Part shown: one piece after another, positions 7,865 through 31,900 of the stretch
Layout: every line of letters begins with the position of its first letter
Numbering within the stretch: the stretch's first letter is position 1
Source: Macrostomum hystrix
Taxonomy: Eukaryota; Animalia; Platyhelminthes
Direction: 5' to 3'
Length of the DNA stretch: 64,000 bases
Assembly: GCA_950097015.1 (NCBI GenBank)
Contig: CATNEN010000018.1
Location: 157,967 to 221,966, forward strand
Program-made: the position numbers and the translations under genes
The notes under the pieces: generated by a model
What the model was told of the DNA's origin: nothing
Databases searched by the model: none
What the model saw: the letters and a program-made list of their open reading frames with translations, nothing else

Positions 7865-8089
7865 GGGTTGGAGTTGTATGCTTTATTATTACAATTAGTA
7901 CAGTAATAAAATTATAAATATTCATGCGTTTTACTGCCCTTTAGTAATTTTTATATGCGCCTTTTTTATTTACAAATGTTTAATGATTTTGAGTTTCTTA
8001 ACTGAATAATTGTCAAACAATTTCGTTCACAAAGGTGACATTAACTTACCTTCATACTGGCGAAGCGATTCCTTCCACCCTTGTTCACC

Positions 8090-11000
8090 CTCTTCTTTTC
8101 TTCTCTTCTTTTCTTCTCTTCTCTTCTTCTTTCCCTTCCCTTCTTCTTTCCCCTTCTCTTCCCTTCTCTTCTCTCCTCTCTTCTCTTCTTTTTTCTTCTC
8201 TTCTCTTCTTTTTTCTTCTTTTTTCTTCTCTTCTCTCTTCTCCTCTTCTCTTCTCTTCTTCCCTTCTTCTTTTTTCTTCTCTTCTCTTCTCTCTTCTCCT
8301 CTTCTCTTCTCTTCTTCCCTTCTTCTTTTTTCTTCTCTTCTCTTCTCTCTTCTCCTCTTCTCTTCTCTTCTTCCCTTCTTCTCTTCTTCTCCTCTTTTCT
8401 TCTCTTCTCTTCTCTTCTCTTCTCTTCTTCTCTTCTCCTCTCTTTTCTTCTCTTCTCTTCTCTTCTCTTCTCTTCTTCTCTTCTCCTCTCTTTTCTTCTC
8501 TTCTCTTCTCTTCTTTTTTCTTCTCTTCTCTTCTCTTCTTTTTTCTTCTCTTCTCTTCTCCTCTCTTTTCTTCTCTTCTCTTCTCTTCTCTTCTCTTCTC
8601 TTCTCTCTTCTTCTCTTCTTCTCCTCTCTTCTCTTCTCTTCTCTTCTCTTCTTCTCTTCTTCTCTCTTTTCTTCTCTTCTCTTCTCTTCTCTTCTTCTCT
8701 TCTCCTCTCTTTTCTTCTCTTCTCTTCTCTTCTCTTCTCTTCTTCTCTTTTTCTCTTCTCTTCTTCTCTTCTCTTCTTTTCTCTTCTTTTCTTCTCTTCT
8801 TTTCTTCTCTTCTCTTCTCTTCTCTTCTTCCCTTCTCCTCTTCTTCTCCTCCTCTTCTCTTCTCTTCTCTTCTCTTCTTCTCTCCTCTTCTCTTCCCTTC
8901 TCTTCTCTTCTCTTCTCTTCTCTTCTTTTCTCTTCTTTTCTTCTCTTCTTTTCTTCTCTTCTCTTCTCTTCTCTTCTTCCCTTCTCCTCTTCTTCTCCTC
9001 CTCTTCTCTTCTCTCTTCTTCTCTTCTTCTCTCCTCTTCTCTTCTCTTCTCTCCTCTTCTCTTCCCTTCTCTCCTCTTCTCTTCTCTTCTTCTCTTCTCT
9101 TCTCTTCTCCTCTTCTCTTCTCTTCTCCTCTTCTCTTCTCTTCTTCTCTTCTTCTTTCCCTTCCATTCTTCTTTCCCCTTCTCTTCTCTTCTCTTCTCTT
9201 CTTCCCTTCTCCTCTTCTTCTCCTCCTCTTCTCTTCTCTCTTCTTCTCTTCTTCTCTCCTCTTCTCTTCTCTTCTCTCCTCTTCTCTTCCCTTCTCTCCT
9301 CTTCTCTTCTCTTCTTCTCTTCTCTTCTCTTCTCCTCTTCTCTTCTCTTCTCCTCTTCTCTTCTCTTCTCTCTTCTTCTCTTCTCTTCTCTTCTCTTCTC
9401 TTCTTCTCTTTTTCTCTTCTCTTGTTCTCTTCTCTTCTTTTCTCTTCTTTTCTTCTCTTCTTTTCTTCTATTCTCTTCTCTTCTCTTCTTCCCTTCTCCT
9501 CTTCTTCTCCTCCTCTTCTCTTCTCTCTTCTTCTCTTCTTCTCTCCTCTTCTCTTCTCTTCTCTCCTCTTCTCTTCCCTCTCTTCTCTTCTCTTCTTCTC
9601 TTCTCTTCTCTTCTCCTCTTATCTTCTCTTCTCCTCTTCTCTTCTCTTCTTCTCTTCTTCTTTCCCTTCCCTTCTTCTTTCCCCTTCTCTTCTCTCCTCT
9701 TCTCTTCTCTTCTTTTCTTCTCTTCTCTTCTCTTCTTTTCTTCTCTTCTTTTCTCTTCTTTTCTTCTCTTCTTTTCTTCTCTTCTCTTCTCTTCTCTTCT
9801 TCCCTTCTCCTCTTCTTCTCCTCCTCTTCTCTTCTCTTCTCTTCTCTTCTTCTCTTTTTCTCTTCTCTTCTTCTCTTCTCTTCTTTTCTCTTCTCTTCTT
9901 CCCTTCTCCTCTTCTTCTCCTCCTATTCTCTTCTCTCTTCTTCTCTTCTTCACTCCTCTTCTCTTCTCTTCTCTCCTCTTCTCTTCCCTTCTCTCCTCTT
10001 CTCTTCCCTTCTCTTCTCTTCTCTTCTCTTCTCTTCTTTTCTCTTCTTTTCTTCTCTTCTTTTCTTCTCTTCTCTTCTCTTCTCTTCTTCCCTTCTCCTC
10101 TTCTTCTCCTCCTCTTCTCTTCTCTCTTCTTCTCTTCTTCTCTCCTCTTCTCTTCTCTTCTCTCCTCTTCTCTTCCCTTCTCTCCTCTTCTCTTCTCTTC
10201 TTCTCTTCTCTTCTCTTCTCCTCTTCTCTTCTCTTCTCCTCTTCTCTTCTCTTCTTCTCTTCTTCTTTCCCTTCCATTCTTCTTTCCCCTTCTCTTCTCT
10301 TCTCTTCTCTTCTTCCCTTCTCCTCTTCTTCTCCTCCTCTTCTCTTCTCTCTTCTTCTCTTCTTCTCTCCTCTTCTCTTCTCTTCTCTCCTCTTCTCTTC
10401 CCTTCTCTCCTCTTCTCTTCTCTTCTTCTCTTCTCTTCTCTTCTCCTCTTCTCTTCTCTTCTCCTCTTCTCTTCTCTTCTCTCTTCTTCTCTTCTCTTCT
10501 CTTCTCTTCTCTTCTTCTCTTTTTCTCTTCTCTTGTTCTCTTCTCTTCTTTTCTCTTCTTTTCTTCTCTTCTTTTCTTCTATTCTCTTCTCTTCTCTTCT
10601 TCCCTTCTCCTCTTCTTCTCCTCCTCTTCTCTTCTCTCTTCTTCTCTTCTTCTCTCCTCTTCTCTTCTCTTCTCTCCTCTTCTCTTCCCTCTCTTCTCTT
10701 CTCTTCTTCTCTTCTCTTCTCTTCTCCTCTTATCTTCTCTTCTCCTCTTCTCTTCTCTTCTTCTCTTCTTCTTTCCCTTCCCTTCTTCTTTCCCCTTCTC
10801 TTCTCTCCTCTTCTCTTCTCTTCTTTTCTTCTCTTCTCTTCTCTTCTTTTCTTCTCTTCTTTTCTCTTCTTTTCTTCTCTTCTTTTCTTCTCTTCTCTTC
10901 TCTTCTCTTCTTCCCTTCTCCTCTTCTTCTCCTCCTCTTCTCTTCTCTTCTCTTCTCTTCTTCTCTTTTTCTCTTCTCTTCTTCTCTTCTCTTCTTTTCT

Positions 11001-13093
11001 CTTCTCTTCTTCCCTTCTCCTCTTCTTCTCCTCCTATTCTCTTCTCTCTTCTTCTCTTCTTCACTCCTCTTCTCTTCTCTTCTCTCCTCTTCTCTTCCCT
11101 TCTCTCCTCTTCTCTTCTCTTCTTCTCTTCTTTCCCCTTCTCTTCTCTCCTCTTCTCTTCTCTTCTCTTCTCTTCTTTTCTTCTCTTCTTTTCTTCTCTT
11201 CTCTTCTCTTCTCTTCTTTTCTTCTCTTCTTTTCTTCTCTTCTCTTCTCTTCTTCTCTTCTCTTCTCTTCTCTTCTTTTTTCTTCTCTTCTTCTCTTCTC
11301 TTCTCTTCTCTTCTCTTCTCTTCTCCTCTTCTCTTCTCTTCTTCTCTTCTTCTTTCCCTTCCCTTCTTCTTTCCCCTTCTCTTCTCTCGTCTTCTCTTCT
11401 CTTCTTTTCTTCTCTTCTCTTCTCTTCTTCTCTTCTCTTCTTTTCTTTTTCTCTTCTTTTCTCTTCTCTTCTCTTCTTTTCTTTTCTCTTCTCCTCTTCT
11501 CTTCTCTTCTTTTTTCTTCTCTTCTCTTCTCTTCTCTTCTCTTCTCTTCTCTCCTCTTCTCTTCTCTTCTCTCCTCTTCTCTTCCCTTCTCTTCTCTTCT
11601 CTTCTCTTCTTCTCTTTTTCTCTTCTCTTCTTCTCTTCTCTTCTTTTCTCTTCTTTTCTTCTCTTCTTTTCTTCTCTTCTCTTCTCTTCTCTTCTTCCCT
11701 TCTCCTCTTCTTCTCCTCCTCTTCTCTTCTCTCTTTTTCTCTTCTTCTCTCCTCTTCTCTTCTCTTCTCTCCTCTTCTCTTCCCTTCTCTCCTCTTCTCT
11801 TCCCTTCTCTTCTCTTCTCTTCTCTTCTTCTCTTCTCTTCTCTTCTCCTTTTCTCTTCTCTTCTCCTCTTCTCCTCTCTTCTTCTCTTCTTCTTTCCCTT
11901 CGCTTCTTCTTTCCCCTTCTCTTCTCTCCTCTTCTCTTCTCTTCTCTTCTCTTCTTTTCTTCTCTTCTCTTTTCTTCTCTTCTTTTCTCTTCTTCTCTTC
12001 TCTTCTTTTCTTCTTCTCTTCTTTTCTCTTCTCTTCTCTTCTTTTCTTTTCTCTTCTCCTCTACTCTTCTCTTCTTTTTTCTTCTCTTCTCTTCTCTTCT
12101 CTTCTCTTCTTCTCTTCTTCTCTCTTTTCTTCTCTTCTCTTCTCTTCTCTTCTCTTCTTCTCTTCTCTTCTTTTCTCTTCTTTTCTTCTCTTCTTTTCTT
12201 CTCTTCTCTTCTCTTCTCTGCTTCCCTTCTCCTCTTCTTCTCCTCCTCTTCTCTTCTCTCTTCTTCTCTTCTTCTCTCCTCTTCTCTTCTCTTCTTTTCT
12301 TCTCTTCTCTTCTCTTCTCTTCTTCTCTTCTCTTCTCTTCTCTTCTTTTTTCTTCTTTTCTTCTCTTCTCTTCTCTTCTCTTCTTTTTTCTTCTCGTCTT
12401 CTCTTCTCTTCTCTTCTCTTCTTTTTTCTTCTCTTCTTCTCTTCCCTTCTCTTCTCTTCTCTTCTCTTCTCTTCTCTTCTCTTCTTCTCTTCTCTTCTCT
12501 TCTCTTCTCTTCTCTTCTCTTCTCTTCTCCTCTTCTCTTCTTCTTTCCCTTCCCTTCTTCTTTCCCCTTCTCTTCTCTTCTTTTCTTCTCTTCTTTTCTT
12601 CTCTTCTCTTCTCTTCTCTTCTTCCCTTCTCCTCTTCTTCTCCTCCTCTTCTCTTCTCTCTTCTTCTCTTCTCTTCTCTTCTCTTCTTTTCTTCTCTTCT
12701 CTTCTCTTCTTCTCTTCTCTTCTTTTCTTTTTCTCTTCTTTTCTCTTCTCTTCTCTTCTTTTCTTTTCTCTTCTCCTCTTCTCTTCTCTTCTTTTTTCTT
12801 CTCTTCTCTTCTCTTCTCTTCTCTTCTCTTCTCTCCTCTTCTCTTCTCTTCTCTCCTCTTCTCTTCCCTCTCTTCTCTTCTCTTCTTCTCTTCTCTTCTC
12901 TTCTCCTCTTATCTTCTCTTCTTTTCTTCTCTTCTCTTCTCTTCTTCTCTTCTCTTCTTTTCTTTTTCTCTTCTTTTCTCTTCTCTTCTTTTTTCTTCTC
13001 CTCTTCTCTTCTCTTCTCTTCCCTTCTCTTCTCTTCTCTTCTCTTCTCTTCTCTTCTCTCCTCTTCTCTTCTCTTCTCTCCTCTTCTCTTCCC
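8090..13093. repeat. Degenerate (CTCTT)n tract 2 (~5 kb) with an internal 1111-bp duplication
   Basis: Rare variants recur at 1111-bp spacing (CTTATCTT 9618/10729; TTGTTCTC 9422/10533; CCTATTCT 9922/11033). Confidence 0.98.
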
Positions 13094-13098
13094 TGTAG

Positions 13099-13490
13099 TG
13101 CAGAACAAATGGCCAAACGATGCTAATGAGACACAGCAGGCACTGATCGAGGCAGTTCAACGCAACATTGAACAGGCGGAAGGTCGAGGCGAAAGCACTG
13201 AAGTGCTAGAAGAGATACTTGAGGTGCTTAAAAATGACCCGCATGCGCTAAAGCGGTTCGCAAAGCTTACAGTCTACAGCCACTCCACGATGGGTAGCAT
13301 TGTGCGCGAGAACTGGGCCTACCTGGCCCGCAATCTGGCATCCGACATCGGCGGCATCCTTGGTCTCTGGCTAGGCGTGTCAATTATTAGCACCTTCGAG
13401 TTCTTCGAGCTATTTATCAGGCTTTTCAGTGTCAGACGAAAGCAAAACCATCAGCAACAAGCAGCCGCCGCCGATGCCGAGCTGACTTAG
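13099..13490 (+). CDS. Terminal exon of a DEG/ENaC (ASIC/degenerin-family) channel subunit; upstream exons not found in the window
   Basis: Acceptor CCCTGTAG|TG at 13098/13099. Translation ...KWP...KRFAKLTVYSH...ENWAYLARNLASDIGGILGLWLGVSIISTFEFFELFIRL contains the family's pre-TM2 WP and KLxVY motifs and the TM2 DIGGxLGLWLGxS signature with the GxS selectivity filter. Confidence 0.9.
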
Positions 13491-18408: not shown

Positions 18409-18688
18409 CATACATGCGCAACACCCGGCCGACCTGGCCGAACCGGCCGGGTAAAACGAGGGCCAAGCAAGGTAAGTCGCAAAAACCAATGGACCAAGCG
18501 CAAAAAATCAAAGGGGAGACCAAGGGACAAAAAAGGAAGGCGTGAAGAAAAGGAAAAAGGGGAGAGAAAAAGAGAGCAAATGAGAGCAAACTAAGTCGTA
18601 AATAGAGCAATGAAACGAACTAAGTCGCAAATGAGAGCAAAAACTAAGTCGCATGGCTGGCTAAGATTTGGGAGGTTGCTCATGTATG
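18409..18688 (-). mobile_element. hAT-type MITE, copy 2 (280 bp), same family, opposite orientation
   Basis: TIRs CATACATGCGCAAC...GTTGCTCATGTATG; own 8-bp TSD ATCTCTGT at 18401-18408 and 18689-18696; interior is a diverged reverse complement of copy 1. Confidence 0.9.
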
Positions 18689-18810
18689 ATCTCTGTTTTC
18701 TGGCAACAAAATTTGCTTTGTGTGTTATAATTGCTTTTACAGAACTACTTCCAATGCAGTTTAGCATAACTTCACTGCTAATTTTGGCCTTGATTCCAAC
18801 ATTGCTTAAT

Positions 18811-21800
18811 CTCTTCTTCTTCTCTTCTCTCTCTTCTTTTCTTCTCTTCTCTTCTTTTCTTCTCTTCTTTTCTTCTCTTCTCTTCTCTTCTTCTCTTCTC
18901 TTCTCTTCTCTTCTTTTTTCTTCTCTTCTTCTCTTCTCTTCTCTTCTCTTCTCTTCTCTTCTCTTCTCCTCTTCTCTTCTCTTCTTCTCTTCTTCTTTCC
19001 CTTCCCTTCTTCTTTCCCCTTCTCTTCTCTCCTCTTCTCTTCTCTTCTTTTCTTCTCTTCTCTTCTCTTCTTCTCTTCTCTTCTTTTCTTTTTCTCTTCT
19101 TTTCTCTTCTCTTCTCTTCTTTTCTTTTCTCTTCTCCTCTTCTCTTCTCTTCTTTTTTCTTCTCTTCTCTTCTCTTCTCTTCTCTTCTCTTCTCTCCTCT
19201 TCTCTTCTCTTCTCTCCTCTTCTCTTCCCTTCTCTTCTCTTCTCTTCTCTTCTTCTCTTTTTCTCTTCTCTTCTTCTCTTCTCTTCTTTTCTCTTCTTTT
19301 CTTCTCTTCTTTTCTTCTCTTCTCTTCTCTTCTCTTCTTCCCTTCTCCTCTTCTTCTCCTCCTCTTCTCTTCTCTCTTCTTCTCTTCTTCTCTCCTCTTC
19401 TCTTCTCTTCTCTCCTCTTCTCTTCCCTTCTCTCCTCTTCTCTTCCCTTCTCTTCTCTTCTCTTCTCTTCTTCTCTTCTCTTCTCTTCTCCTTTTCTCTT
19501 CTCTTCTCCTCTTCTCCTCTCTTCTTCTCTTCTTCTTTCCCTTCCCTTCTTCTTTCCCCTTCTCTTCTCTCCTCTTCTCTTCTCTTCTCTTCTCTTCTTT
19601 TCTTCTCTTCTCTTTTCTTCTCTTCTTTTCTCTTCTTCTCTTCTCTTCTTTTCTTCTTCTCTTCTTTTCTCTTCTCTTCTCTTCTTTTCTTTTCTCTTCT
19701 CCTCTTCTCTTCTCTTCTTTTTTCTTCTCTTCTCTTCTCTTCTCTTCTCTTCTTCTCTTCTTCTCTCTTTTCTTCTCTTCTCTTCTCTTCTCTTCTCTTC
19801 TTCTCTTCTCTTCTTTTCTCTTCTTTTCTTCTCTTCTTTTCTTCTCTTCTCTTCTCTTCTCTGCTTCCCTTCTCCTCTTCTTCTCCTCCTCTTCTCTTCT
19901 CTCTTCTTCTCTTCTTCTCTCCTCTTCTCTTCTCTTCTTTTCTTCTCTTCTCTTCTCTTCTCTTCTTCTCTTCTCTTCTCTTCTCTTCTTTTTTCTTCTT
20001 TTCTTCTCTTCTCTTCTCTTCTCTTCTTTTTTCTTCTCTTCTTCTCTTCTCTTCTCTTCTCTTCTTTTTTCTTCTCTTCTTCTCTTCCCTTCTCTTCTCT
20101 TCTCTTCTCTTCTCTTCTCTTCTCTTCTTCTCTTCTCTTCTCTTCTCTTCTCTTCTCTTCTCTTCTCTTCTTCTCTTCTCTTCTTCTTTCCCTTCCCTTC
20201 TTCTTTCCCCTTCTCTTCTCTTCTTTTCTTCTCTTCTTTTCTTCTCTTCTCTTCTCTTCTCTTCTTCCCTTCTCCTCTTCTTCTCCTCCTCTTCTCTTCT
20301 CTCTTCTTCTCTTCTCTTCTCTTCTCTTCTCTTCTTCTCTTTTTCTCTTCTCTTCTTCTCTTCTCTTCTTTTCTCTTCTTTTCTTCTCTTCTTTTCTTCT
20401 CTTCTCTTCTCTTCTCTTCTTCCCTTCTCCTCTTCTTCTCCTCCTCTTCTCTTCTCTCTTCTTCTCTTCTTCTCTCCTCTTCTCTTCTCTTCTCTCCTCT
20501 TCTCTTCCCTCTCTTCTCTTCTCTTCTTCTCTTCTCTTCTCTTCTCCTCTTATCTTCTCTTCTTTTCTTCTCTTCTCTTCTCTTCTTCTCTTCTCTTCTT
20601 TTCTTTTTCTCTTCTTTTCTCTTCTCTTCTCTTCTTTTCTTTTCTCTTCTCCTCTTCTCTTCTCTTCTTTTTTCTTCTCTTCTCTTCTCTTCTCTTCTCT
20701 TCTCTTCTCTCCTCTTCTCTTCTCTTCTCTCCTCTTCTCTTCCCTTCTCTTCTCTTCTCTTCTCTTCTTCTCTTTTTCTCTTCTCTTCTTCTCTTCTCTT
20801 CTTTTCTCTTCTTTTCTTCTCTTCTTTTCTTCTCTTCTCTTCTCTTCTCTTCTTCCCTTCTCCTCTTCTTCTCCTCCTCTTCTCTTCTCTCTTCTTCTCT
20901 TCTTCTCTCCTCTTCTCTTCTCTTCTCTCCTCTTCTCTTCCCTTCTCTCCTCTTCTCTTCCCTTCTCTTCTCTTCTCTTCTCTTCTTCTCTTCTCTTCTC
21001 TTCTCCTTTTCTCTTCTCTTCTCCTCTTCTCCTCTCTTCTTCTCTTCTTCTTTCCCTTCCCTTCTTCTTTCCCCTTCTCTTCTCTCATCTTCTCTTCTCT
21101 TCTCTTCTTTTCTTCTCTTCTCTTTTCTTCTCTTCTTTTCTCTTCTTCTCTTCTCTTCTTTTCTTCTTCTCTTCTTTTCTCTTCTCTTCTCTTCTTTTCT
21201 TTTCTCTTCTCCTCTTCTCTTCTCTTCTTTTTTCTTCTCTTCTCTTCTCTTCTCTTCTCTTCTTCTCTTCTTCTCTCTTTTCTTCTCTTCTCTTCTCTTC
21301 TCTTCTCTTCTTCTCTTCTCTTCTTTTCTCTTCTTTTCTTCTCTTCTTTTCTTCTCTTCTCTTCTCTTCTCTGCTTCCCTTCTCCTCTTCTTCTCCTCCT
21401 CTTCTCTTCTCTCTTCTTCTCGTCTTCTCTCCTCTTCTCTTCTCTTCTTTTCTTCTCTTCTCTTCTCTTCTCTTCTTCTCTTCTCTTCTCTTCTCTTCTT
21501 TTTTCTTCTTTTCTTCTCTTCTCTTCTCTTCTCTTCTTTTTTCTTCTCTTCTTCTCTTCTCTTCTCTTCTCTTCTTTTTTCTTCTCTTCTTCTCTTCCCT
21601 TCTCTTCTCTTCTCTTCTCTTCTCTTCTCTTCTCTTCTTCTCTTCTCTTCTCTTCTCTTCTCTTCTCTTCTCTTCTCTTCTCCTCTTCTCTTCTTCTTTC
21701 CCTTCCCTTCTTCTTTCCCCTTCTCTTCTCTTCTTTTCTTCTCTTCTTTTCTTCTCTTCTCTTCTCTTCTCTTCTTCCCTTCTCCTCTTCTTCTCCTCCT

Positions 21801-23800
21801 CTTCTCTTCTCTCTTCTTCTCTTCTCTTCTCTTCTCTTCTCTTCTTCTCTTTTTCTCTTCTCTTGTTCTCTTCTCTTCTTTTCTCTTCTTTTCTTCTCTT
21901 CTTTTCTTCTCTTCTCTTCTCTTCTCTTCTTCCCTTCTCCTCTTCTTCTCCTCCTCTTCTCTTCTCTCTTCTTCTCTTCTTCTCTCCTCTTCTCTTCTCT
22001 TCTCTCCTCTTCTCTTCCCTCTCTTCTCTTCTCTTCTTCTCTTCTCTTCTCTTCTCCTCTTATCTTCTCTTCTCCTCTTCTCTTCTCTTCTTCTCTTCTT
22101 CTTTCCCTTCCCTTCTTCTTTCCCCTTCTCTTCTCTCCTCTTCTCTTCTCTTCTTTTCTTCTCTTCTCTTCTCTTCTTTTCTTCTCTTCTTTTCTCTTCT
22201 TTTCTTCTCTTCTTTTCTTCTCTTCTCTTCTCTTCTCTTCTTCCCTTCTCCTCTTCTTCTCCTCCTCTTCTCTTCTCTTCTCTTCTCTTCTTCTCTTTTT
22301 CTCTTCTCTTCTTCTCTTCTCTTCTTTTCTCTTCTCTTCTTCCCTTCTCCTCTTCTTCTCCTCCTATTCTCTTCTCTCTTCTTCTCTTCTTCTCTCCTCT
22401 TCTCTTCTCTTCTCTCCTCTTCTCTTCCCTTCTCTCCTCTTCTCTTCTCTTCTTCTCTTCTTTCCCCTTCTCTTCTCTCCTCTTCTCTTCTCTTCTCTTC
22501 TCTTCTTTTCTTCTCTTCTCTTCTTTTCTTCTCTTCTTTTCTTCTCTTCTCTTCTCTTCTTCTCTTCTCTTCTCTTCTCTTCTTTTTTCTTCTCTTCTTC
22601 TCTTCTCTTCTCTTCTCTTCTCTTCTCTTCTCTTCTCCTCTTCTCTTCTCTTCTTCTCTTCTTCTTTCCCTTCCCTTCTTCTTTCCCCTTCTCTTCTCTC
22701 CTCTTCTCTTCTCTTCTTTTCTTCTCTTCTCTTCTCTTCTTCTCTTCTCTTCTTTTCTTTTTCTCTTCTTTTCTCTTCTCTTCTCTTCTTTTCTTTTCTC
22801 TTCTTTTCTTCTCTTCTCTTCTCTTCTTCTCTTCTCTTCTCTTCTCTTCTTTTTTCTTCTCTTCTCCTCTTCTCTTCTCTTCTTCTCTTCTTCTTTCCCT
22901 TCCCTTCTTCTTTCCCCTTCTCTTCTCTCCTCTTCTCTTCTCTTCTTTTCTTCTCTTCTCTTCTCTTCTTCTCTTCTCTTCTTTTCTTTTTCTCTTCTTT
23001 TCTCTTCTCTTCTCTTCTTTTCTTTTCTCTTCTCCTCTTCTCTTCTCTTCTTTTTTCTTCTCTTCTCTTCTCTTCTCTTCTCTTCTCTTCTCTCCTCTTC
23101 TCTTCTCTTCTCTCCTCTTCTCTTCCCTTCTCTTCTCTTCTCTTCTCTTCTTCTCTTTTTCTCTTCTCTTCTTCTCTTCTCTTCTTTTCTCTTCTTTTCT
23201 TCTCTTCTTTTCTTCTCTTCTCTTCTCTTCTCTTCTTCCCTTCTCCTCTTCTTCTCCTCCTCTTCTCTTCTCTCTTCTTCTCTTCTTCTCTCCTCTTCTC
23301 TTCTCTTCTCTCCTCTTCTCTTCCCTCCTCTTCTCTTCTCTCTTCTTCTCTTCTTCTCTCCTCTTCTCTTCTCTTCTCTCCTCTTCTCTTCCCTTCTCTC
23401 CTCTTCTCTTCCCTTCTCTTCTCTTCTCTTCTCTTCTTCTCCTCTCTTCTCTTCTCCTTTTCTCTTCTCTTCTCCTCTTCTCCTCTCTTCTTCTCTTCTT
23501 CTTTCCCTTCCCTTCTTCTTTCCCCTTCTCTTCTCTCCTCTTCTCTTCTCTTCTCTTCTCTTCTTTTCTTCTCTTCTCTTTTCTTCTCTTCTTTTCTCTT
23601 CTTCTCTTCTCTTCTTTTCTTCTTCTCTTCTTTTCTCTTCTCTTCTCTTCTTTTCTTTTCTCTTCTCCTCTTCTCTTCTCTTCTTTTTTCTTCTCTTCTC
23701 TTCTCTTCTCTTCTCTTCTTCTCTTCTTCTCTCTTTTCTTCTCCTCTCTACTCTTCTCTTCTCTTCTTCTCTTCTCTTCTTCTCTTCTCTTCTTCTCTTC
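18811..23800. repeat. Degenerate (CTCTT)n tract 3 (~5 kb), paralogous to tract 2, with an internal 1510-bp duplication
   Basis: CTGCTTCCC at 19861/21371 and CTTATCTT at 20549/22059 (1510-bp spacing); shares diagnostic variants with tract 2. Confidence 0.98.
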
Positions 23801-23947
23801 AGCTCAGCAGCCAATGAGACTCCTGCAGCTATGAACGATTTTGGTTGGCTGCTGCGGACTGCAAAAGCATAGTCCTAAACCAAACACTGAGCTGCCCTAC
23901 TCGACCTAATTTATCACTTTCCCAAACCACAAGCAGACACCTGCAAA

Positions 23948-26900
23948 ATGTTTCCCTTACTCACAATACTCACCGCTGTCCTCCTGTACCTCATGAACTC
24001 ACTTCATTCCTCACACCACCGAGAAGACGCACAAGAACTCACCGACCAGGACCTCCTCGCAGCCATCAGAGACGACCGAGTGGAACCCGTTCAGCGATTC
24101 ATTAACAGCGGCGGGAGCCTCGACACCTTCATCGCCTATGCTGACTCATTCTTTACTCCAGCAATGCTCGCTTGCCGATTCGGAAGACATGAAATTCTCG
24201 TGAGACTCATCCGAGCCATTGCAGATGTAGATAAGCAGAACTGGAGAGGAACGACGGCATTGTATATTGCATCACTATATGGACACCACCGACTGGTGAA
24301 ATCACTCATCAAAGCACGAGCCGACGTCAATCTTCAAGATAATACTGGCGCCTCACCTCTCCACATAGCATCCTGCAATGGCCATAACGACGTCGTCCAC
24401 TCACTCATCAAAGCACGAGCCGACGTCAATCTTCAAACAAATACTGGCTACTCACCTCTCTACATTGCATCACAAAATGGCCATAACGACGTCGTCCACT
24501 CACTCATCAAAGCACGAGCCGACGTCAATCTTCAAACAATTACTGGCGCCTCACCTCTCTACATTGCATCATATCAAGGCCATAACGACGTCGTCCACTC
24601 ACTCATCAATGCACGAGCCGACGTCAATCTTCAAGAAAATACTGGCTACTCACCTCTCCACATTGCATCACAAAATGGCCATAACGACGTCGTCCACTCA
24701 CTCATCAAAGCACGAGCCGACGTCAATCTTCAAACAATTACTGGCGCCTCACCTCTCTACATTGCATCATATCAAGGCCATAACGACGTCGTCCACTCAC
24801 TCATCAAAGCACGAGCCGACGTCAATCTTCAAGAAAATACTGGCGCCTCACCTGTCTACATTGCATCACAAAATGGCCATAACGACGTCGTCCACTCACT
24901 CATCAAAGCACGAGCCGACGTCAATCTTCAAGATAATACTGGCGCCTCACCTCTCTACATTGCATCACGAAATGGCCATAACGACGTCGTCCACTCACTC
25001 ATCAAAGCACGAGCCGACGTCAATCTTCAAAAAAATACTGGCGCCTCACCTCTCTACATTGCATCTCGCAATGGCCACCTCAGTGTTGTCGAGTCACTCA
25101 TGAAGGTCGTTCATAGCCCCGACTTGCTGACAGCTGCTCTGCGAATCGCCACGGAAATCGGCCATGACCAAGTGGTTGACCTGCTGAGCCGTGGATCCTC
25201 CGCGCCATTGCCTGAGAAGCAAAACAGGTAGGAGCTCCTGTTTCTTGTAAAAGTCACCTGAACAATCATAGATACTTCGGATTCTCTGAGTATTCAGACT
25301 CCAAATCTGATAGCTGAACTTCGGAACTGATTGCTATTGTGTTAATGTGGTATCGTCAGTTATTGTACATATAAAATATGGTAGCCTGTGTAGAACCCTT
25401 GTGAGCACAAAAAGGTTCTCTCGAATACCTGCTGCTTTTACTTCGCATTGTTAAGAGCTGGCGAATTTATAGCGAAAAGCCTCGAATTCCCAACAATGAC
25501 CACTAGGAGTAAAATAACGGAAAACTACGATAATAGGAAATAGTTATTACATATGTCTGCTTGCGCCGAAGATTATACCACAAGGATAGGAAATTGTTAG
25601 TGGCGCTGGTGTGCCGCCGGCCCTAGTTAGCAGTGGCGCCCTCAGAAGGCGAAAGACAGAACTTCCTAGTAGTTCTTATTGTCAATGCCTGTTTAGCCAC
25701 AGACAGCAGACTCCACTTCAAAATTCTCAGTTTATTCTCAGTTTATGAATGCCGCCTCCTCTCACCCTTCAGAGCCTCCCAGCCTCACTGAACCTCAGCA
25801 CTGCCGCCTCCTCTCACCCTTCAGAGCCTCCCAGACTCACTGTAACTCAGCACTGCCGCCTCCTCTCACCCTTCAGAGCCTCCCAGCCTCACTGAAACTC
25901 AGCACTGCCGCCTCCTCTCACCCTTCAGAGCCGCACCCAGCGACGCAGAGCTGAGCCAGCAGCTGCACTCCAAGCTCTCTCAGTCGGGATTCGTGGACTC
26001 CAGAGCCGCCTTGCAGATCGCTGTGGCTGACGTCTTGCAGGATGTTCTCAGGAAGAGAATGAACGATGACGACTGGTTCGCTGTGGGCAGCTTCTCTGAG
26101 GCCTGGGGCAACAGCCTGGTCTCTCTGGATGGCAGAACTGACATCGACTCTGACATCGATGTTATTCAGCTGATTCCAGGAAGGCCGATTCACCCGAGAG
26201 ATGTGTGCGAGTGCGACCGAGTGGAGGCTGCTCAGACAGTGGAGCTCAGCAATGGCCACATCCTGAGCTCCGGATTCGGTGAGAATTTCCTGTCAGAGAC
26301 TGTCGGGATGGCTGGGACAAGAATTGAACATGAGTTTGGCTTGCTCATCTTCTTTGGCTTTCTAAAGCAAACAACAAACAAGGAAAGCAAACAAATGTTC
26401 AGTCCAGGTTTGAAATGCAGAGATATTGAAAATAATATTGAAAATAATCGTGAACGTGCTCCCCTTCTCTTTGTTTCTTAGGCTCGCAATACTTTCACAG
26501 TCACAGGTGTGCAAAATTACAGTTTTTGAGGTGACCGCCCCAGTCCATGGACTGAACCGTTGTACACAGCTTTTGGAAGCGTCGTACAAACGCTACGGCT
26601 GGGCCATTGCAAATTTCGGTTATTTCTATTATATTATATTCTGTTGCCGCTTTTACAGAATTCGTTTTCTGTGATTCTGAAATTATGCCAATCAATGTCC
26701 ATTGATTGTCAACAATATTCCGAACAGCCGATTCTTACTAGCCATATAGTAGCTAGTTATCCAGTAGACAGGAAAATTATCCTAATTTATGTGGGCGGGA
26801 AAACCCCCGCCGCAGGAAAATCCCATCGAATTTCCAGTCCAGATTTGAATCTCGGCCTGAGGGAACGATGCTTGTCCAAGAGCTGGAATCATAACCTCGT

Positions 26901-28761
26901 ATTTATTCAGCTCAGCCAGCTGAAGGTTACAGTAGAAATTTGAGGGGGCTGGTGACTCCCCAGTACAAAGACTGAAGAGCTGTATACAGTACTCACAAAA
27001 TACTCATAAGAAACTAAAGAAGCAAGGAAGAATTGAAAATAATCGTGCACGTGCTGCCCTCCGTAGGGGGCAAAAGTTTCTAGTCTGCACTAAATTTTCA
27101 TATAAATCGCAGCTACAAACCATCTTTGCACAATTTTTTTATATTATCGAGAAATAGTTCTGTGTCTATTAACTTGAAATCTGATGGCATTTTACATATT
27201 TCTTGCATTTCCGTTTTCTCCAGCTTCCAACCCAGCCTACACTGAAAATGGCTCAGCCCTGAGACCGTCTGTGGACCGAGTCACCGCCCGCCGCCTCTGC
27301 CGCTACCCTCCCATCGCGCCGCTGCAGCCACCAAGAGTCTCCAACTCCAACATCCCCCAGTCCGTGCTGCAGTCGCTCCAGCGAGACATCACCTCTGCCT
27401 CATGGCCCTGTCACGTGGTGCACGCAGCTCCTCCCGGAATGGGGGGCCAGCAGCTCCGAGTGAGCAGCAGCTTCCTGGAGAGGCGACTGCTGCGAAGTCT
27501 CAGCACTCTGCAAGGCCAGCTGTTCATCATACTCAAGTGGCTGCTGAAGAAGAAAATCTCAAACGTCGGCTTCAAGTCCTATCACGCAAAGACCGTCACG
27601 TTCCGAATGCTGGAGGAGACACCTGCTGAGCAGTGGAAGCCGGAGAATCTCGTGAGTCTCACGACACGCTCGCTGCAGATTTTGCTTGACGGTGTGGAGA
27701 GCGGCTGCAGATCAGACACACCTGACGGTCGGATCCTGGAGCACTTCTTCCTGAGCGATGCCGCTGTGTACCTGAAGGGCTTGAAGTCAGCTGAGAGAGT
27801 GAGCGAAGCGTTGAATCGGGCAGCCGGCGCATTGAGAGACGCCATGGCTGAGCTGCCTCAGCTGCTGCTGCAGTTCGAGGACAGTCTGCGACCCGTCACC
27901 GACTCGGGCCGATTCCACTTCCAACCGTTCCTCATCCTGCCTCTACTCAATGACCGACCCGTGTCAGAAGCCAAGACATGCGAGTTCCACGAGATCTACG
28001 ACATCGTGAGAGAGTCCGTGCTTCGTCTGTCCGATGGAGACCGCAGCCCGCAGTCCCGAGAGAGTCTCGCAGAGCTGATCAACAAACTGCCAGACTGCGC
28101 CCGATCAGCGCGAGAGTCTCTCAGAGCGCTGGCCTGCCTGAAGTTCGGCGACAGACGCACAGCTGAAAAAGTTGTGAGCGACTGCGGGCCGTTCAGTGCG
28201 AGCAGAGGCATCGATTGGGGAGCTGAGAGGTCAGCGAGAGAGGCCACGGACTTTGTGTGGCAGCACCTGAAGAGCCGAGACTCCGCCTGGAAATTCTGCT
28301 TGGAGTTTGACGAGCGACCGAAGCTGCCGATTCAGCACGAAGTCTTTGCCGACTGCTTTCCGCTGCAGATGATGAACTACAGCACATTATTCTACCTGAA
28401 CTTTGACGCTCTGCTGCGGGCTCTTTGCAATGAGTTGACAGTAGCAGGAGACCGGAGCGATCAGGACTGGATCCAGGATGTGGCTCAGAGGGAGGATGCG
28501 GATGAGCAGGAGCTGCTGGTGGCTGCGGCGATCTGCGGAGATCTGGAGCTGCTGCGGCAGCTGCGCAGAAGAATCACTCACGAGCTGTGCCGGCTGCCGG
28601 CGTGGCTGCAGCAGAAGATTGAGAGGCTGAGCAGTCAAGGTGAAGATCGCCAAGACCAAGGTGAATATGCATTTGAGCATTCGAGTCGGAGTCAACTTGC
28701 ATACCAAGAAAGAAAAACCAGTTGTGGATCCAAATGCTGCCGGTGCTGTGTGTGTTTGTGA
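23948..28761 (+). CDS. Ankyrin-repeat cGAS-like receptor (cGLR / Mab-21-family nucleotidyltransferase); join(23948..25227,25929..26278,27224..28761), ~1055 aa
   Basis: Both introns are phase-consistent (AG|GTAG phase 2 to CTTCAG|A; G|GTGAG phase 1 to CTCCAG|CT); 3168 nt is a whole number of codons. Exon 1 has ~10 ankyrin repeats. Exon 2 has GSFSE (26086) and SDID (D at 26152, 26158). Exon 3 has VDRV (D at 27274), [20 protein letters not shown] (cf. cGAS SYHVKT) and LEHFF. Start could be ATG 23948 or 23993. Confidence 0.9.
24314..25080 (+). repeat. Eight near-identical 99-bp coding repeats (33-aa ankyrin units)
   Basis: Unit GCACGAGCCGACGTCAATCTTCAA...CACTCACTCATCAAA; [33 protein letters not shown]. 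Confidence 0.97.
25751..25930 (+). repeat. Intronic 52-bp minisatellite, each unit containing a copy of the exon-2 3' splice site
   Basis: CTCTCACCCTTCAG|AG with the AG at 25771, 25823, 25875 and 25927. Confidence 0.92.
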
Positions 28762-28925: not shown

Positions 28926-31900
28926 TAGAAATTCAGGCCAGTGACCACTAAACTTCAGGCCATTGACCATTAAACTTCAGGCCAGAGACCATCGAAATTC
29001 AGGCCAGAGACCATCGAAATTCAGGCCATTGACCATCGAAATTCAGGCCAGAGACCATCGAAATTCAGGCCATTGACCATTAAACTTCAGGCCAGAGACC
29101 ATAGAAATTCAGGCCAGTGACCATTAAACTTCAGGCCAGAGACCATCGAAATTCAGGCCAGAGACCATCGAAATTCAGGCCATTGACCATTAAACTTCAG
29201 GCCAGAGACCATTGAAATTCAGGCCAGTGACCATTAAACTTCAGGCCAGAGACCATCGAAATTCAGGCCAGAGACCATCGAAATTCAGGCCAGTGAATAT
29301 CGAACTTCAGGCCTGTGGCTATCGAACTTAAGGCCAGTGACCATCGAACTTCAGGCCAGTGACCATTGAACTTCAGCCTCGTGCTTTCTGAGTGAGTCCT
29401 ACCTCCTTAGGCCAGTGACCAAATAACTTCCGGCCAGTGACTATCAAACTTCAGGCCAGTGACCATTGAACTTCAGCCTCGTGCTTTCTGAGAGAGTCCT
29501 ACCTCCTTAGGGCAGTGACCAAATAACTTCCGGCCAGTGACCATCGAACTTCAGTCTCGTGCTTTGTGAGAGTCCTACCTCCTTAGGCCAGTGACCTAAT
29601 AACTTCAGGCCAGTGACTATCAAACTTCAGGCCAGTGACTATCAAACTTCAGGCCAGAGACCATCGAACCTCAGGCCAGTGAATATCGAACTTCAGGCCT
29701 GTGGCTATCGAACTTAAGGCCAGTGACCATCGAACTTCAGGCCAGTGACCATTGAACTTCAGCCTCGTGCTTTCTGAGAGAGTCCTACCTCCTTAGGCCA
29801 GTGACCAAATAACTTCCGGCCAGTGACTATCGAACTTCAGGCCAGTGACCATTGAACTTCAGCCTCGTGCTTTCTGAGAGAGTCCTACCTCCTTAGGCCA
29901 GTGACCAAATAACTTCCGGCCAGTGACCATCGAACTTCAGTCTCGTGCTTTGTGAGTGAGTCCTACCTCCTTAGGCCAGTGACCTAATAACTTCAGGCCA
30001 GTGACTATCAAACTTCAGGCCAGTGACTATCAAACTTCAGGCCAGAGACCATCGAACTTCAGGCCAGCGACCATCGAACATCAGGCTCGTGCTCTTTTAG
30101 TGAGTCCTACCTCCTCAGGCCAGTGACCATCGAACTTCAGGCTCGTGCTTTCTGAGTGAGTCTTGCCTTCTCAGGCCAGTGACTTTCAAACTTCAGGCCA
30201 GTGACCATCTAACTTCAGGCCAGTGCCCATCGAACTTCAGCCTCGTGCTTTCTGAGTGAGTCCTACCTCCTTAGGCCAGTGACCAAATAACTTCCGGCCA
30301 GTGACCATCGAACTTCAGTCTCGTGCTTTGTGAGTGAGTCCTACCTCCTTAGGCCAGTGACCAAATAACTTCCGGCCAGTGACCATCGAACTTCAGTCTC
30401 GTGCTTTGTGAGTGAGTCCTACCTCCTTAGGCCAGTGACCTAATAACTTCAGGCCAGTGACTATCAAACTTCAGGCCAGTGACTATCAAACTTCAGGCCA
30501 GAGACCATCGAACTTCAGGCCAGCGACCATCGAACATCAGGCTCGTGCTCTTTTAGTGAGTCCTACCTCCTCAGGCCAGTGACCATCGAACTTCAGGCTC
30601 GTGCTTTCTGAGTGAGTCATGCCTCCTCAGGCCAGTGACCTACCAACTTATGGGCCAGTGACCATCGAACTTCAGGCCAGTGAATATCGAACTTCAGGCC
30701 AGTGACCATTGAACTTCAGCCTCGTGCTTTCTGAGTGAGTCCTACCTCCTTAGGCCAGTGACCTAATAACTTCAGGCCAGTGACTATCGAACTTCAGGCC
30801 AGAGACCATCGAACTTCAGGCCAGTGACTATCGAACTTCAGGCCAGAGACCATCGAACTTCAGGCCAGTGACCATCGAACTTCAGGCTCCTGCTTTGTGA
30901 GTGAGTCCTACCGCCTCAGGCAAGTGACCATCGAACTTCAGGCTAGTGCTTTGTGAGTGAGTCATGCCTCCTCATGCCAGTGACTTTCAAACTTCAGGCC
31001 AGTGACTATCGAACTTCAGGCAAGTGACCATCGAACTTCAGGACAGTGACCATCGAACTTCAGGCTCGTGCTTTGTGAGTGAGTCCTACCTCCTCAGGCC
31101 AGTGACTGTCGTACTTCAGGCCAGAGACCATCGAACTTCAGGCTCCTGCTTTGTGAGTGAGTCCTACCGCCTCAGGCAAGTGACCATCGAACTTCAGGCT
31201 CGTGCTTTGTGAGTGAGTCTTACCTGCTCAGGCCAGTGACTCTTGAACTTCAGGCCAGAGACAATCGAACTTCAGGCAAGTGACCATCGAACTTCAGGCC
31301 AGTGACCATCGAACATCAGGCTCGTGCTCTTTTAGTGAGTCCTACCTCCTTAGGCCAGTGACCATTGAACTTCAGCCTCGTGCTTTCTGAGTGAGTCCTA
31401 CCTCCTTAGGCCAGTGACCTAATAACTTCAGGCCAGTGACTATCGAACTTCAGGCAAGTGACCATCGAACTTCAGGACAGTGACCATCGAACTTCAGGCT
31501 CGTGCTTTGTGAGTGAGTCCTACCTCCTCAGCCCAGTGACTGTCGTACTTCAGGCCAGAGACCATCGAACTTCAGGCTCCTGCTTTGTGAGTGAGTCCTA
31601 CCGCCTCAGGCAAGTGACCATCGAACTTCAGGCTCGTGCTTTGTGAGTGAGTCTTACCTGCTCAGGCCAGTGACTCTTGAACTTCAGGCCAGAGACAATC
31701 GAACTTCAGGCAAGTGACCATCGAACTTCAGGCCAGTGACCATCGAACATCAGGCTCGTGCTCTTTTAGTGAGTCCTACCTCCTTAGTCCAGTGACCATT
31801 GAACTTCAGCCTCGTGCTTTCTGAGTGAGTCCTACCTCCTTAGGCCAGTGACCTAATAACTTCAGGCCAGTGACTATCGAACTTCAGGCCAGAGACCATC

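What the first reader, a model, noticed from the sequence alone, without database searches (positions are those of the whole stretch)
24314..25080. Natural DARPin-like diversification: ankyrin repeats vary almost only at binding-surface residues
Seen: across eight 99-bp units the framework [19 protein letters not shown] is DNA-identical except one K-to-N change and the capping end of the last unit. Changes cluster in Q[D/T/E/K][N/I]TG[A/Y]SP[L/V][H/Y]IAS[C/Q/Y/R][N/Q]G and are mostly non-synonymous; units 3 and 5 are near copies. Established: the beta-hairpin and helix-1 positions form the ankyrin binding surface randomised in DARPins, and fungal NLR WD40/TPR/ANK arrays evolve by concerted evolution with positive selection at such sites. 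Inference: a recombination-shuffled specificity module for non-self recognition.
Basis: partly seen in the sequence, partly recalled or inferred. Interest (0 to 1): 0.8.

Follow-up and report, generated by a model that had tools for sequence, protein, structure and literature searches.

The report
Hypervariable ankyrin array on cGAS-like gene
The near-identical ankyrin repeats are real: they form the front of an expressed flatworm gene for a cGAS-like signalling enzyme and differ almost only at target-gripping residues, so they look like an inherited, fast-reshuffling sensor of the kind known from fungal immune receptors.

Summary
Window 24344-25036 holds seven full 99-bp ankyrin units, with partial matches on both flanks. 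A 57-nt framework is identical in six units and has one change in the seventh. Only 16 nucleotide columns vary, and 14 of them lie in amino-acid-changing codons.

The array is the core of exon 1 of a three-exon gene (23948-28761, +). RNA-like contigs splice it to a cGAS-like nucleotidyltransferase. The genome is from a Macrostomum-type flatworm. It has at least 45 collinear ankyrin-then-cGAS-like loci, with 7 to 53 units per array.

Across 18 paralogous arrays (the window's gene left out), I counted single-base differences between nearest-neighbour units. At the positions randomised in DARPins there were 49 non-synonymous and 1 synonymous difference. Elsewhere there were 30 and 14. That gives omega of about 5 against 0.8.

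Tandem paralogs differ by whole-unit insertions, deletions and shared unit cassettes. Their introns and enzyme exons stay 95-98.5% identical.

The closest known parallels are fungal NLR repeat arrays with high internal conservation, and the ankyrin-cGLR fusions catalogued in 2023. The ligand, any immune role, polymorphism between individuals and somatic change are all untested.

This scan has already reported the same phenomenon at other loci of this genome.

The parts
23948..25227 (+). Exon 1: start codon, hydrophobic N-terminus and the whole ankyrin domain (about 11 repeats). It ends in phase 2 at a GT donor that overlaps the apparent TAG stop.
   Evidence: ORF. Ank/Ank_2 Pfam hits, E=1e-71 to 1e-72. 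Joint 25224->25926, GT..AG, cut +3, in runs X5 and X7.
23948..24004 (+). N-terminal hydrophobic stretch of about 19 residues. It may be a membrane anchor or a signal-like helix.
   Evidence: Sequence. It is conserved in paralogs. Its role was not tested.
24047..24343 (+). N-cap and diverged ankyrin units (-2 to 0). The tail of unit 0 already carries the array framework.
24344..25036 (+). Seven near-identical 99-bp ankyrin units. The hypervariable codons are 3, 7, 11, 12, 32 and 33 (DARPin numbering 5, 9, 13, 14, 1, 2).
   Evidence: Alignment to DARPin D12.
25037..25227 (+). Last unit, with a diverged second half, then the C-cap and a linker ending ...EKQN(R).
   Evidence: The ending is conserved in paralogs.
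25228..25928 (+). Intron 1 (701 nt, GT..AG). It contains a 52-bp tandem repeat at 25750-25932 that runs into the acceptor.
25929..26278 (+). Exon 2: start of the cGAS-like nucleotidyltransferase core, with the G-S motif and the D-I-D acidic pair.
   Evidence: Translation. X5 contigs start exactly at 25929 with no differences. Donor GT at 26279.
26279..27223 (+). Intron 2 (945 nt, GT..AG).
   Evidence: X7 joint from 26278, and an X5 loose end at 27223 that carries the end of exon 2. Acceptor AG at 27222-27223.
27224..28761 (+). Exon 3: the rest of the cGAS-like domain (V-D third acidic motif, Mab-21_C helix bundle), a long C-terminal extension and a Cys-rich tail, then the stop.
   Evidence: ORF. 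Mab-21_C at 19 bits. Family profile against cGAS, E=2e-5. Fold of the 68%-identical M. lignano homolog matches cGAS and Sp-cGLR1.

Best explanation
SHOWN
- The 99-bp array is the central part of the ankyrin domain in exon 1 of an expressed three-exon gene. The other two exons encode a cGAS-like (Mab21-fold) nucleotidyltransferase. The whole protein is about 1,055 residues.
- The gene is one of at least 45 ankyrin-plus-cGAS-like loci in a Macrostomum-type flatworm genome.
- Arrays change by duplication, deletion and exchange of whole 33/34-residue units, and this keeps the scaffold nearly identical even at silent sites.
- The codons for the beta-hairpin and the start of helix 1, which form the concave ligand-binding face, gain or keep amino-acid differences about five times faster than silent sites change.

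INFERRED
- The array is the ligand-recognition module of a germline-encoded, rapidly diversifying receptor family.
- Binding of a ligand, probably a protein, to the ankyrin groove controls synthesis of a nucleotide second messenger by the fused enzyme. This would be analogous to the variable repeat domains of fungal NLRs.
For: Repeat anatomy.

Ankyrin identity and ungapped register with ankyrin-1 and DARPins: (E=1e-138 and 4e-113).

Splicing: RNA-like runs X5 and X7 have no depth in either intron. They carry a GT..AG joint from exon 1 to exon 2 and evidence for the exon 2 to exon 3 junction. The reading frames agree.

Family: more than 100 ankyrin matches and 86 cGAS-like matches in the own genome. 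At least 45 are collinear pairs on the same strand, mostly 0.5-6 kb apart.

cGAS-like domain:
- Family profile against PDB cGAS, E=2e-5.
- AF2 model of the M. lignano homolog, pLDDT 72. All top Foldseek hits are cGAS or cGLR, probability 1.0.
- M. lignano relatives were included in the published cGLR screen.

Selection:
- Pooled within-array pN at hypervariable codons is 0.34 against framework pS of 0.06.
- Nearest-unit single-base changes at the a priori DARPin positions, with the window gene excluded, are N=49 and S=1. Elsewhere they are N=30 and S=14. Omega is 5.2 against 0.8, Fisher P=9e-5.
- Nucleotide identity exceeds amino-acid identity in every array analysed, homogenised or not.
- There is no special mutation signature.

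Shuffling:
- Whole-unit indels between the tandem paralogs L021, L023 and L024, and a unit cassette shared between the window gene and the C20 gene.
- Downstream introns and exons are 95-98.5% identical while the ankyrin exon is 88-92% identical.

Homogenisation: framework distance is 1-6% within most arrays (up to 10%) and 4-26% between subfamilies. An M. lignano protein has its own homogenised array.
Against: - No ligand, enzyme activity or response to infection is known.
- The window's exon 3 scores below the Pfam Mab-21_C cut-off (19.2 against 24.1 bits).
- No STING was found above threshold, so the downstream pathway is open.
- NG86 pN/pS inside the hypervariable codons is only about 1.1-1.3 when multi-hit codons are included. 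Part of the diversity is therefore old variants being reassorted, not new mutations.
- Edges of a minimum spanning tree are not independent events, and gene conversion can mimic point change.
- Other ankyrin arrays in this genome, on ion channels, are reported by the scan to show a similar pattern. The pattern may not be specific to immunity.
- Polymorphism between individuals could not be read from the short-read contigs.
Confidence: 0.6

Rival explanations
1. The array is a young tandem amplification drifting neutrally. The scaffold is held by structural constraint, and surface positions are simply free to vary, with no selection for diversity.
For: Units 2/4 and 3/5 are 1-nt copies, so duplication is recent. 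pN/pS inside the hypervariable codons is near 1 when multi-hit codons are counted. Framework omega is about 0.5-0.8, which is ordinary.
Against: Neutral sites cannot change faster than silent sites, yet non-synonymous change at the surface codons is 4-5 times the silent rate. Changes at those codons among nearest units are N=49 to S=1. Many differences are 2-3 nt per codon beside identical silent sites in the flanking framework.
Confidence: 0.12
2. The variable ankyrin groove binds the animal's own proteins, such as partners, regulators or localisation factors. Paralogs diversify by subfunctionalisation. The family is not a non-self sensor.
For: Most ankyrin domains bind endogenous partners. 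The scan notes similar homogenised arrays on ion-channel genes in this genome (untested here). No STING was found above threshold. The cGAS-like exons show relaxed pN/pS of 0.5-1.2 between paralogs.
Against: Endogenous partners rarely drive omega to about 5 together with large swings in copy number (7 to 53 units). The fused domain belongs to a family described as pattern-recognition receptors. The pattern matches the fungal NLR arrays linked to non-self recognition.
Confidence: 0.2
3. Somatic diversification: the array is rearranged or converted in body cells, as in lamprey VLRs, to make individual-cell repertoires.
For: Only the general resemblance: repeat modules with variable surface residues, and many related arrays available as possible donors.
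Against: The germline gene is a complete open frame. RNA-like contigs match the genomic units exactly (records 18-21). There are no truncated donor units anywhere else in the 64-kb window, on either strand. There is no deaminase-like mutation signature.
Confidence: 0.03
4. Assembly artefact: a collapsed or chimeric repeat.
For: Repeats of 99 bp with a 57-nt identical core break short-read contigs.
Against: The array is only 0.8 kb inside a long contig of a 42-contig assembly. DNA and RNA-like contigs from public runs match unit-specific stretches exactly. About 20 paralogs show the same architecture with intact frames.
Confidence: 0.02

Closest known systems
Fungal NLR repeat domains with high internal conservation (ANK, TPR and WD40 arrays of Podospora and other fungi; Dyrka et al. 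2014, PMC4986451)
   Same: Near-identical ankyrin units. Variation in repeat number. Signs of recombination or concerted evolution. Hypervariable, positively selected residues in the inner helix and beta-hairpin of the concave face. The array is fused to a signalling domain of a putative innate-immune receptor family (one search compared).
   Different: The partner domain is a cGAS-like nucleotidyltransferase, not a NACHT or NB-ARC NTPase. The array is N-terminal, not C-terminal. The host is an animal, and that paper reports such arrays to be rare in Metazoa (0.8% of repeats). Allelic repeat-number polymorphism is shown in fungi and not yet here.
Animal cGAS-like receptors fused to ankyrin repeats (Li et al. 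2023, 10.1101/2023.02.22.529553)
   Same: The domain architecture of ANK plus cGLR is catalogued there, for example in the coral S. pistillata. Macrostomum lignano relatives of this enzyme domain were in their screen.
   Different: That work does not mention homogenised, hypervariable arrays or selection on them: a text search found no 'hypervariable' or 'positive selection'. It states that most platyhelminths lack cGLRs. Here one flatworm genome has at least 45 such loci.
DARPins (designed ankyrin repeat proteins)
   Same: A fixed consensus scaffold with diversity confined to hairpin and helix-1 positions. Five of the six randomised positions (2, 3, 5, 13, 14) are among the seven most variable codons of the family, and position 33 is the eighth.
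   Different: DARPins are synthetic libraries. Here positions 1 and 9 also vary, and the hairpin length varies between 33 and 34 residues. The randomised positions are quoted from my own knowledge of Binz et al. 2003, supported by the D12 alignment.
Lamprey variable lymphocyte receptors
   Same: Repeat-module receptors whose diversity sits on the concave surface.
   Different: VLRs are LRR proteins assembled somatically from flanking cassettes into an incomplete germline gene. Here the germline gene is complete and no cassettes flank it.

Membership tests
Ankyrin repeat proteins (Pfam Ank / Ank_2) | 33-residue helix-turn-helix-hairpin repeats that match the Pfam models above the curated cut-off | tested here: met
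   Ank_2 at 240 bits and Ank at 231 bits, against cut-offs of 27 and 21. Ungapped alignment to ankyrin-1 and DARPins.
cGAS-like receptors (cGLR / Mab21 nucleotidyltransferases) | cGAS/Mab21 bilobed nucleotidyltransferase fold | tested here: met
   This was tested on the 68%-identical M. lignano homolog, not on the window protein, because the exons were not joined. The AF2 model has pLDDT 72. All top Foldseek hits are cGAS or Sp-cGLR1, probability 1.0, TM about 0.5 by target. The family profile matches cGAS at E=2e-5.
cGAS-like receptors (cGLR / Mab21 nucleotidyltransferases) | Pfam Mab-21 models above the gathering score | tested here: inconclusive
   The window's exon 3 scores 19.2 bits on Mab-21_C against a cut-off of 24.1. 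Relative P0006 scores 25.0 bits. There is no hit for exon 2.
cGAS-like receptors (cGLR / Mab21 nucleotidyltransferases) | Catalytic G-S loop, the [DE]-x-[DE] pair and a third acidic residue | tested here: inconclusive
   The motifs are present by inspection: G-S and D-I-D in exon 2, and V-D in exon 3. They are nearly invariant in family alignment A1. No residue-level structural alignment to cGAS was available.
cGAS-like receptors (cGLR / Mab21 nucleotidyltransferases) | Ligand-activated synthesis of a cyclic di- or oligonucleotide that signals through STING or another receptor | not testable with these tools
   This needs biochemistry. The only STING_LBD hit is below the cut-off (25.6 against 27 bits), and hmmscan did not confirm it on the ORF.
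Repeat receptors with high internal conservation, fungal NLR type | Repeats more than 85% identical over at least 100 residues | tested here: met
   The seven units (231 residues) have a mean identity of 87.6% in amino acids and 92.8% in nucleotides.
Repeat receptors with high internal conservation, fungal NLR type | Repeat-number variation and recombination between repeats | tested here: met
   Met between paralogs: 7 to 53 units, whole-unit indels and shared cassettes. It was not tested between alleles or individuals.
Repeat receptors with high internal conservation, fungal NLR type | Diversifying selection at concave-face residues | tested here: met
   Omega is about 5 at the a priori DARPin positions and 0.8 elsewhere. 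Counts are N=49, S=1 against N=30, S=14. This is a counting method, not a codon model.
Repeat receptors with high internal conservation, fungal NLR type | Central NACHT or NB-ARC (NOD) NTPase domain | tested here: not met
   Pfam scans of all three exons find only Ank families and a weak Mab-21_C hit. The gene is therefore not an NLR. It only works like one.
VLR-like somatically assembled receptors | Incomplete germline gene flanked by donor cassettes | tested here: not met
   The germline frame is complete and spliced. No other framework copies were found in the window on either strand, allowing 10 mismatches or fewer, and no six-frame unit-HMM hits were found outside the gene.

The most novel reading that the evidence does not exclude
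Macrostomid flatworms belong to a phylum reported to have lost TLRs and, for the most part, cGLRs. They may nevertheless run an NLR-like, germline-encoded variable receptor system. In this reading, dozens of cGAS-like enzymes are each aimed by a recombining, DARPin-like ankyrin paratope at protein ligands such as pathogen effectors or allotypes, not at nucleic acids. That would make cGLR activation programmable by repeat shuffling.
Probability: 0.3. Interest if true: 0.85.

Novelty: new variant of a known kind. Interest (0 to 1): 0.7.

Why it matters
cGAS-like receptors are known as sensors of nucleic acids, or of ligands still unknown. Most of the active cGLRs without a ligand have no obvious sensor domain.

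A large animal family in which the enzyme is fused to a homogenised, hypervariable ankyrin surface would point to protein-ligand sensing. It would also be a mode of receptor diversification (unit shuffling plus selection at paratope codons) described so far mainly for fungal NLRs.

Macrostomum can be studied by RNAi and transgenesis, so the question of what the variable ankyrin groove binds becomes directly testable.

The arrays are also a natural counterpart of DARPin libraries. They show which scaffold positions evolution itself varies: positions 1 and 9 and the hairpin length, in addition to the designed set.

Tried and rejected
1. AF2 of exon 1 in single-sequence mode gave a low-confidence model (pLDDT 62) made of beta strands. 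This contradicts the E=1e-138 ankyrin homology and was discarded. Mapping to the concave face therefore rests on the ungapped alignment to ankyrin-1 and DARPin structures. No coordinates were available to measure exposure.

2. Pooled NG86 pN/pS inside the hypervariable codons is about 1.1-1.3. The value is confounded by multi-hit codons. I replaced it with single-base changes between nearest-neighbour units, using a position set fixed in advance from DARPins, with the window gene excluded.

3. The C-cap row was out of frame and is ignored.

4. STING search: one hit below threshold, not confirmed on the ORF. No conclusion can be drawn.

5. The DARPin paper I opened (PMC8683736) does not list the randomised positions. 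They are quoted from my own knowledge.

6. Polymorphism between individuals: the Logan contigs break inside the array, and paralogs cross-map. This was not resolvable.

7. Targeted hypermutation: the ratio of transitions to transversions is about 1:2 at both hypervariable and framework sites. Rejected.

8. The joined three-exon protein was not built or searched. Exons were searched separately, and a natural full-length M. lignano homolog stood in for the fold test.

9. Other ORFs in the window gave no Pfam families, apart from a low-complexity GETHR repeat match.
Full report
**1. The observation**

Tandem Repeats Finder reports a 99-bp period with 7.8 copies at 24302-25077, 91% matches and no indels. 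The array lies in a 427-codon open frame at 23948-25231 on the + strand.

I cut the frame in the register TGxSPLxIASxxGH...NLQxx, which puts unit starts at 24245+99k. This gives seven near-identical units (k=1-7, 24344-25036) flanked by diverged units 0 and 8.

- A 57-nt framework is exact in six units and has one substitution (K to N) in the seventh.
- Only 16 of the 99 columns vary. They lie in codons 3, 6, 7, 11, 12, 23, 32 and 33, plus two synonymous columns in unit 1.
- Several hypervariable codons differ by two or three bases, for example Ala/Tyr at codon 3 and Cys/Gln/Tyr/Arg at codon 11.
- Units 2/4 and 3/5 differ by a single base, which indicates a recent 198-bp duplication.
- Unit identity is higher in DNA (92.8%) than in protein (87.6%).

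**2. Where the variable residues sit**

The domain aligns without gaps to ankyrin-1 (E=1e-138) and to DARPin D12 constructs (E=4e-113). My unit position p therefore corresponds to DARPin position p+2, and positions 32 and 33 correspond to DARPin 1 and 2.

In DARPin numbering, the window's variable codons are 1, 2, 5, 8, 9, 13, 14 and 25. Four of them (2, 5, 13, 14) belong to the six randomised DARPin positions (2, 3, 5, 13, 14, 33). That position list comes from my own knowledge of Binz et al. 2003. The three internal repeats of D12 differ at those same positions.

For this array alone, 8 of the 16 variable columns fall in those 18 nucleotides (P=0.0014). An AF2 single-sequence model of exon 1 was unusable, so the mapping rests on homology.

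**3. What the array belongs to**

The apparent stop codon overlaps a splice donor.

- Public runs X5 and X7 have no depth in 25339-25851 or 26707-27219, so they behave as RNA.
- They carry a GT..AG joint that ends exon 1 at 25227 and starts exon 2 at 25929.
- They also support the junction from exon 2 (end 26278) to exon 3 (start 27224).
- X5 contigs match unit-specific and exon 2 sequence exactly (splice sites).
- The reading frames fit across both junctions.

Exon 2 carries a G-S loop and a D-I-D pair. Exon 3 carries a V-D motif and a weak Mab-21_C match.

Instead I used full-length Macrostomum lignano relatives (up to 68% identity).

- A 14-sequence profile of the enzyme part hits PDB cGAS at E=2e-5.
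- An AF2 model of that part (pLDDT 72) retrieves only cGAS and cGLR structures, including coral Sp-cGLR1, at probability 1.0.
- M. lignano relatives of this domain were in the published cGLR screen.

The gene is therefore an ankyrin-array cGAS-like receptor of about 1,055 residues. The genome is from a Macrostomum-type flatworm that is not M. lignano: all 34 relatives found are from M. lignano, apart from one unnamed entry.

**4. The family**

The own genome (220 Mb) gives more than 100 ankyrin matches and 86 matches to the enzyme exon. At least 45 of these form collinear, same-strand pairs with the array upstream, mostly 0.5-6 kb apart.

Contig C18, whose last 64 kb is the window, holds six or seven such genes in tandem. 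Twenty-odd loci were fetched.

- The close paralogs share the hydrophobic N-terminus, the caps and the exon-ending ...EKQN(R). The more distant ones do not.
- They carry between 7 and 53 units.
- Many units are 34 residues long, with one extra residue at the hairpin tip.
- More distant paralogs have ordinary diverged arrays, with 43-60% unit identity.

An M. lignano protein (P0026) has ten near-identical units built on a different framework. Homogenisation has therefore happened separately in each lineage.

**5. Homogenisation and shuffling**

Framework-only distance is 1-6% within most arrays (up to 10%) and 4-26% between subfamilies.

- The tandem paralogs L021, L023 and L024 have the same order of unit types but differ by whole-unit insertions and deletions.
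- The window gene and the C20 gene share a two-unit cassette set among otherwise different units.
- Between C18 and C20 paralogs, the 3' part of intron 1, exon 2, intron 2 and exon 3 are 95-98.5% identical. The ankyrin exon aligns at only 88-92% and in many shifted registers.
- Silent divergence of the caps and enzyme exons between these paralogs is only 0.01-0.08.

**6. Selection**

Pooled within-array NG86 values:

| Codons | pN | pS |
|---|---|---|
| 1, 3, 7, 11, 12, 32, 33 | 0.34 | 0.30 |
| Framework | 0.029 | 0.059 |

The high apparent pS inside the variable codons reflects multi-base codon replacements. I therefore counted only single-base differences along minimum-spanning-tree edges between units that differ by 2 nt or fewer. 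I used the DARPin position set fixed in advance and left the window gene out:

| Positions | N | S | Omega against pooled silent rate |
|---|---|---|---|
| DARPin set | 49 | 1 | 5.2 |
| Elsewhere | 30 | 14 | 0.8 |

Fisher's test gives P=9e-5. Edges of 3 nt or fewer, and of 8 nt or fewer, give the same picture.

The seven most variable codons within arrays include five of the six DARPin positions (P=5e-4), and the eighth is the sixth DARPin position. Transitions and transversions are equally distributed at variable and framework sites, so nothing points to targeted hypermutation.

Caveats:
- The tree edges are not independent events.
- Gene conversion can import variants.
- This is a counting method, not a codon model.

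The safest wording is that amino-acid diversity at the binding face is generated or retained several times faster than silent change, in the face of homogenisation.

**7. Mechanism and rivals**

Best reading (0.6): a germline-encoded, rapidly reshuffling recognition module that gates a cGAS-like enzyme. The anatomy, splicing, family structure and selection signal are shown. Ligand binding, gating and any immune role are inferred.

Rivals:
- Neutral relaxed constraint (0.12). This is contradicted by omega well above 1.
- Binding of endogenous partners with subfunctionalisation (0.2). This is not excluded. The scan also notes similar arrays on ion-channel genes in this genome.
- Somatic diversification (0.03). 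The germline gene is complete, there are no donor fragments in the window, and RNA-like contigs match the genomic units.
- Assembly artefact (0.02).

No STING was found above threshold.

**8. Comparison with what is known**

Fungal NLRs carry ANK, TPR and WD arrays with more than 85% internal identity, repeat-number polymorphism and positive selection on the concave face. The same paper found such arrays to be rare in Metazoa.

Li et al. 2023 catalogued ANK-cGLR fusions and stated that most platyhelminths lack cGLRs. Their text does not mention hypervariable or homogenised arrays.

Concerted evolution of metazoan repeats has been linked in general terms to host-parasite arms races.

This locus is therefore a new variant of known kinds: the fungal-NLR mode of repeat diversification on an animal cGLR. 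It fails the NLR membership test because it has no NOD domain.

**9. Earlier notes of this scan**

The scan has already reported the same phenomenon at other loci of this genome, including one on the same contig that I analysed as L039. Those notes agree with this report, but they are not independent evidence. They gave me the lead that the array and the downstream ORF form one gene, which I then tested with reads and frames.

Noticed in passing
window 18610-23817, 8010-13490, 60000-64000: There are multi-kilobase (TCTTC)n-type microsatellite tracts; one of them reaches 5.2 kb just upstream of the gene. They give extreme GC and AT skew and spurious long ORFs in several frames.
   Followed up: no
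window 28928-30000: A 22-bp satellite with 44-, 66- and 386-bp higher-order periods begins about 170 bp after the gene's stop codon.
   Followed up: no
window 25750-25932: A 52-bp tandem repeat (3.5 copies, 96% matches) in intron 1 runs into the acceptor site of exon 2.
   Followed up: no
window 23948-24004 and 28717-28761: The protein starts with a hydrophobic stretch of about 19 residues that is conserved in close paralogs. It ends in a Cys-rich tail. Both ends could tether it to membranes, and an earlier scan note discusses the tail as a prenylation signal.
   Followed up: no
L021-L035 (own-genome paralogs): About half of all units are 34 residues long rather than 33. The extra residue (mostly V, A or K) sits at the hairpin tip, usually in the pattern Q-E-K-V followed by a non-Thr first residue. 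Hairpin length is therefore itself a variable character.
   Followed up: partly
window 27226-28758 against the C18/C20 paralogs: The cGAS-like exon 3 has pN/pS of about 0.5-1.2 between young tandem paralogs. That is relaxed for an enzyme. Several paralogous enzyme exons carry in-frame stops, which suggests birth-and-death turnover.
   Followed up: partly
L041 (G000:C2:9104529-9104996, minus strand): This is the only STING ligand-binding-domain candidate in the genome. It scores 25.6 bits, just under the Pfam cut-off, and hmmscan of the ORF did not confirm it.
   Followed up: partly
window 27388, 27495, 27526, 27530, 27624: Most or all of the four public runs laid on the window carry the same alternative base at full depth at these exon 3 sites. 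Either the sequenced lines differ from the assembled individual or a near-identical paralog is being read.
   Followed up: no
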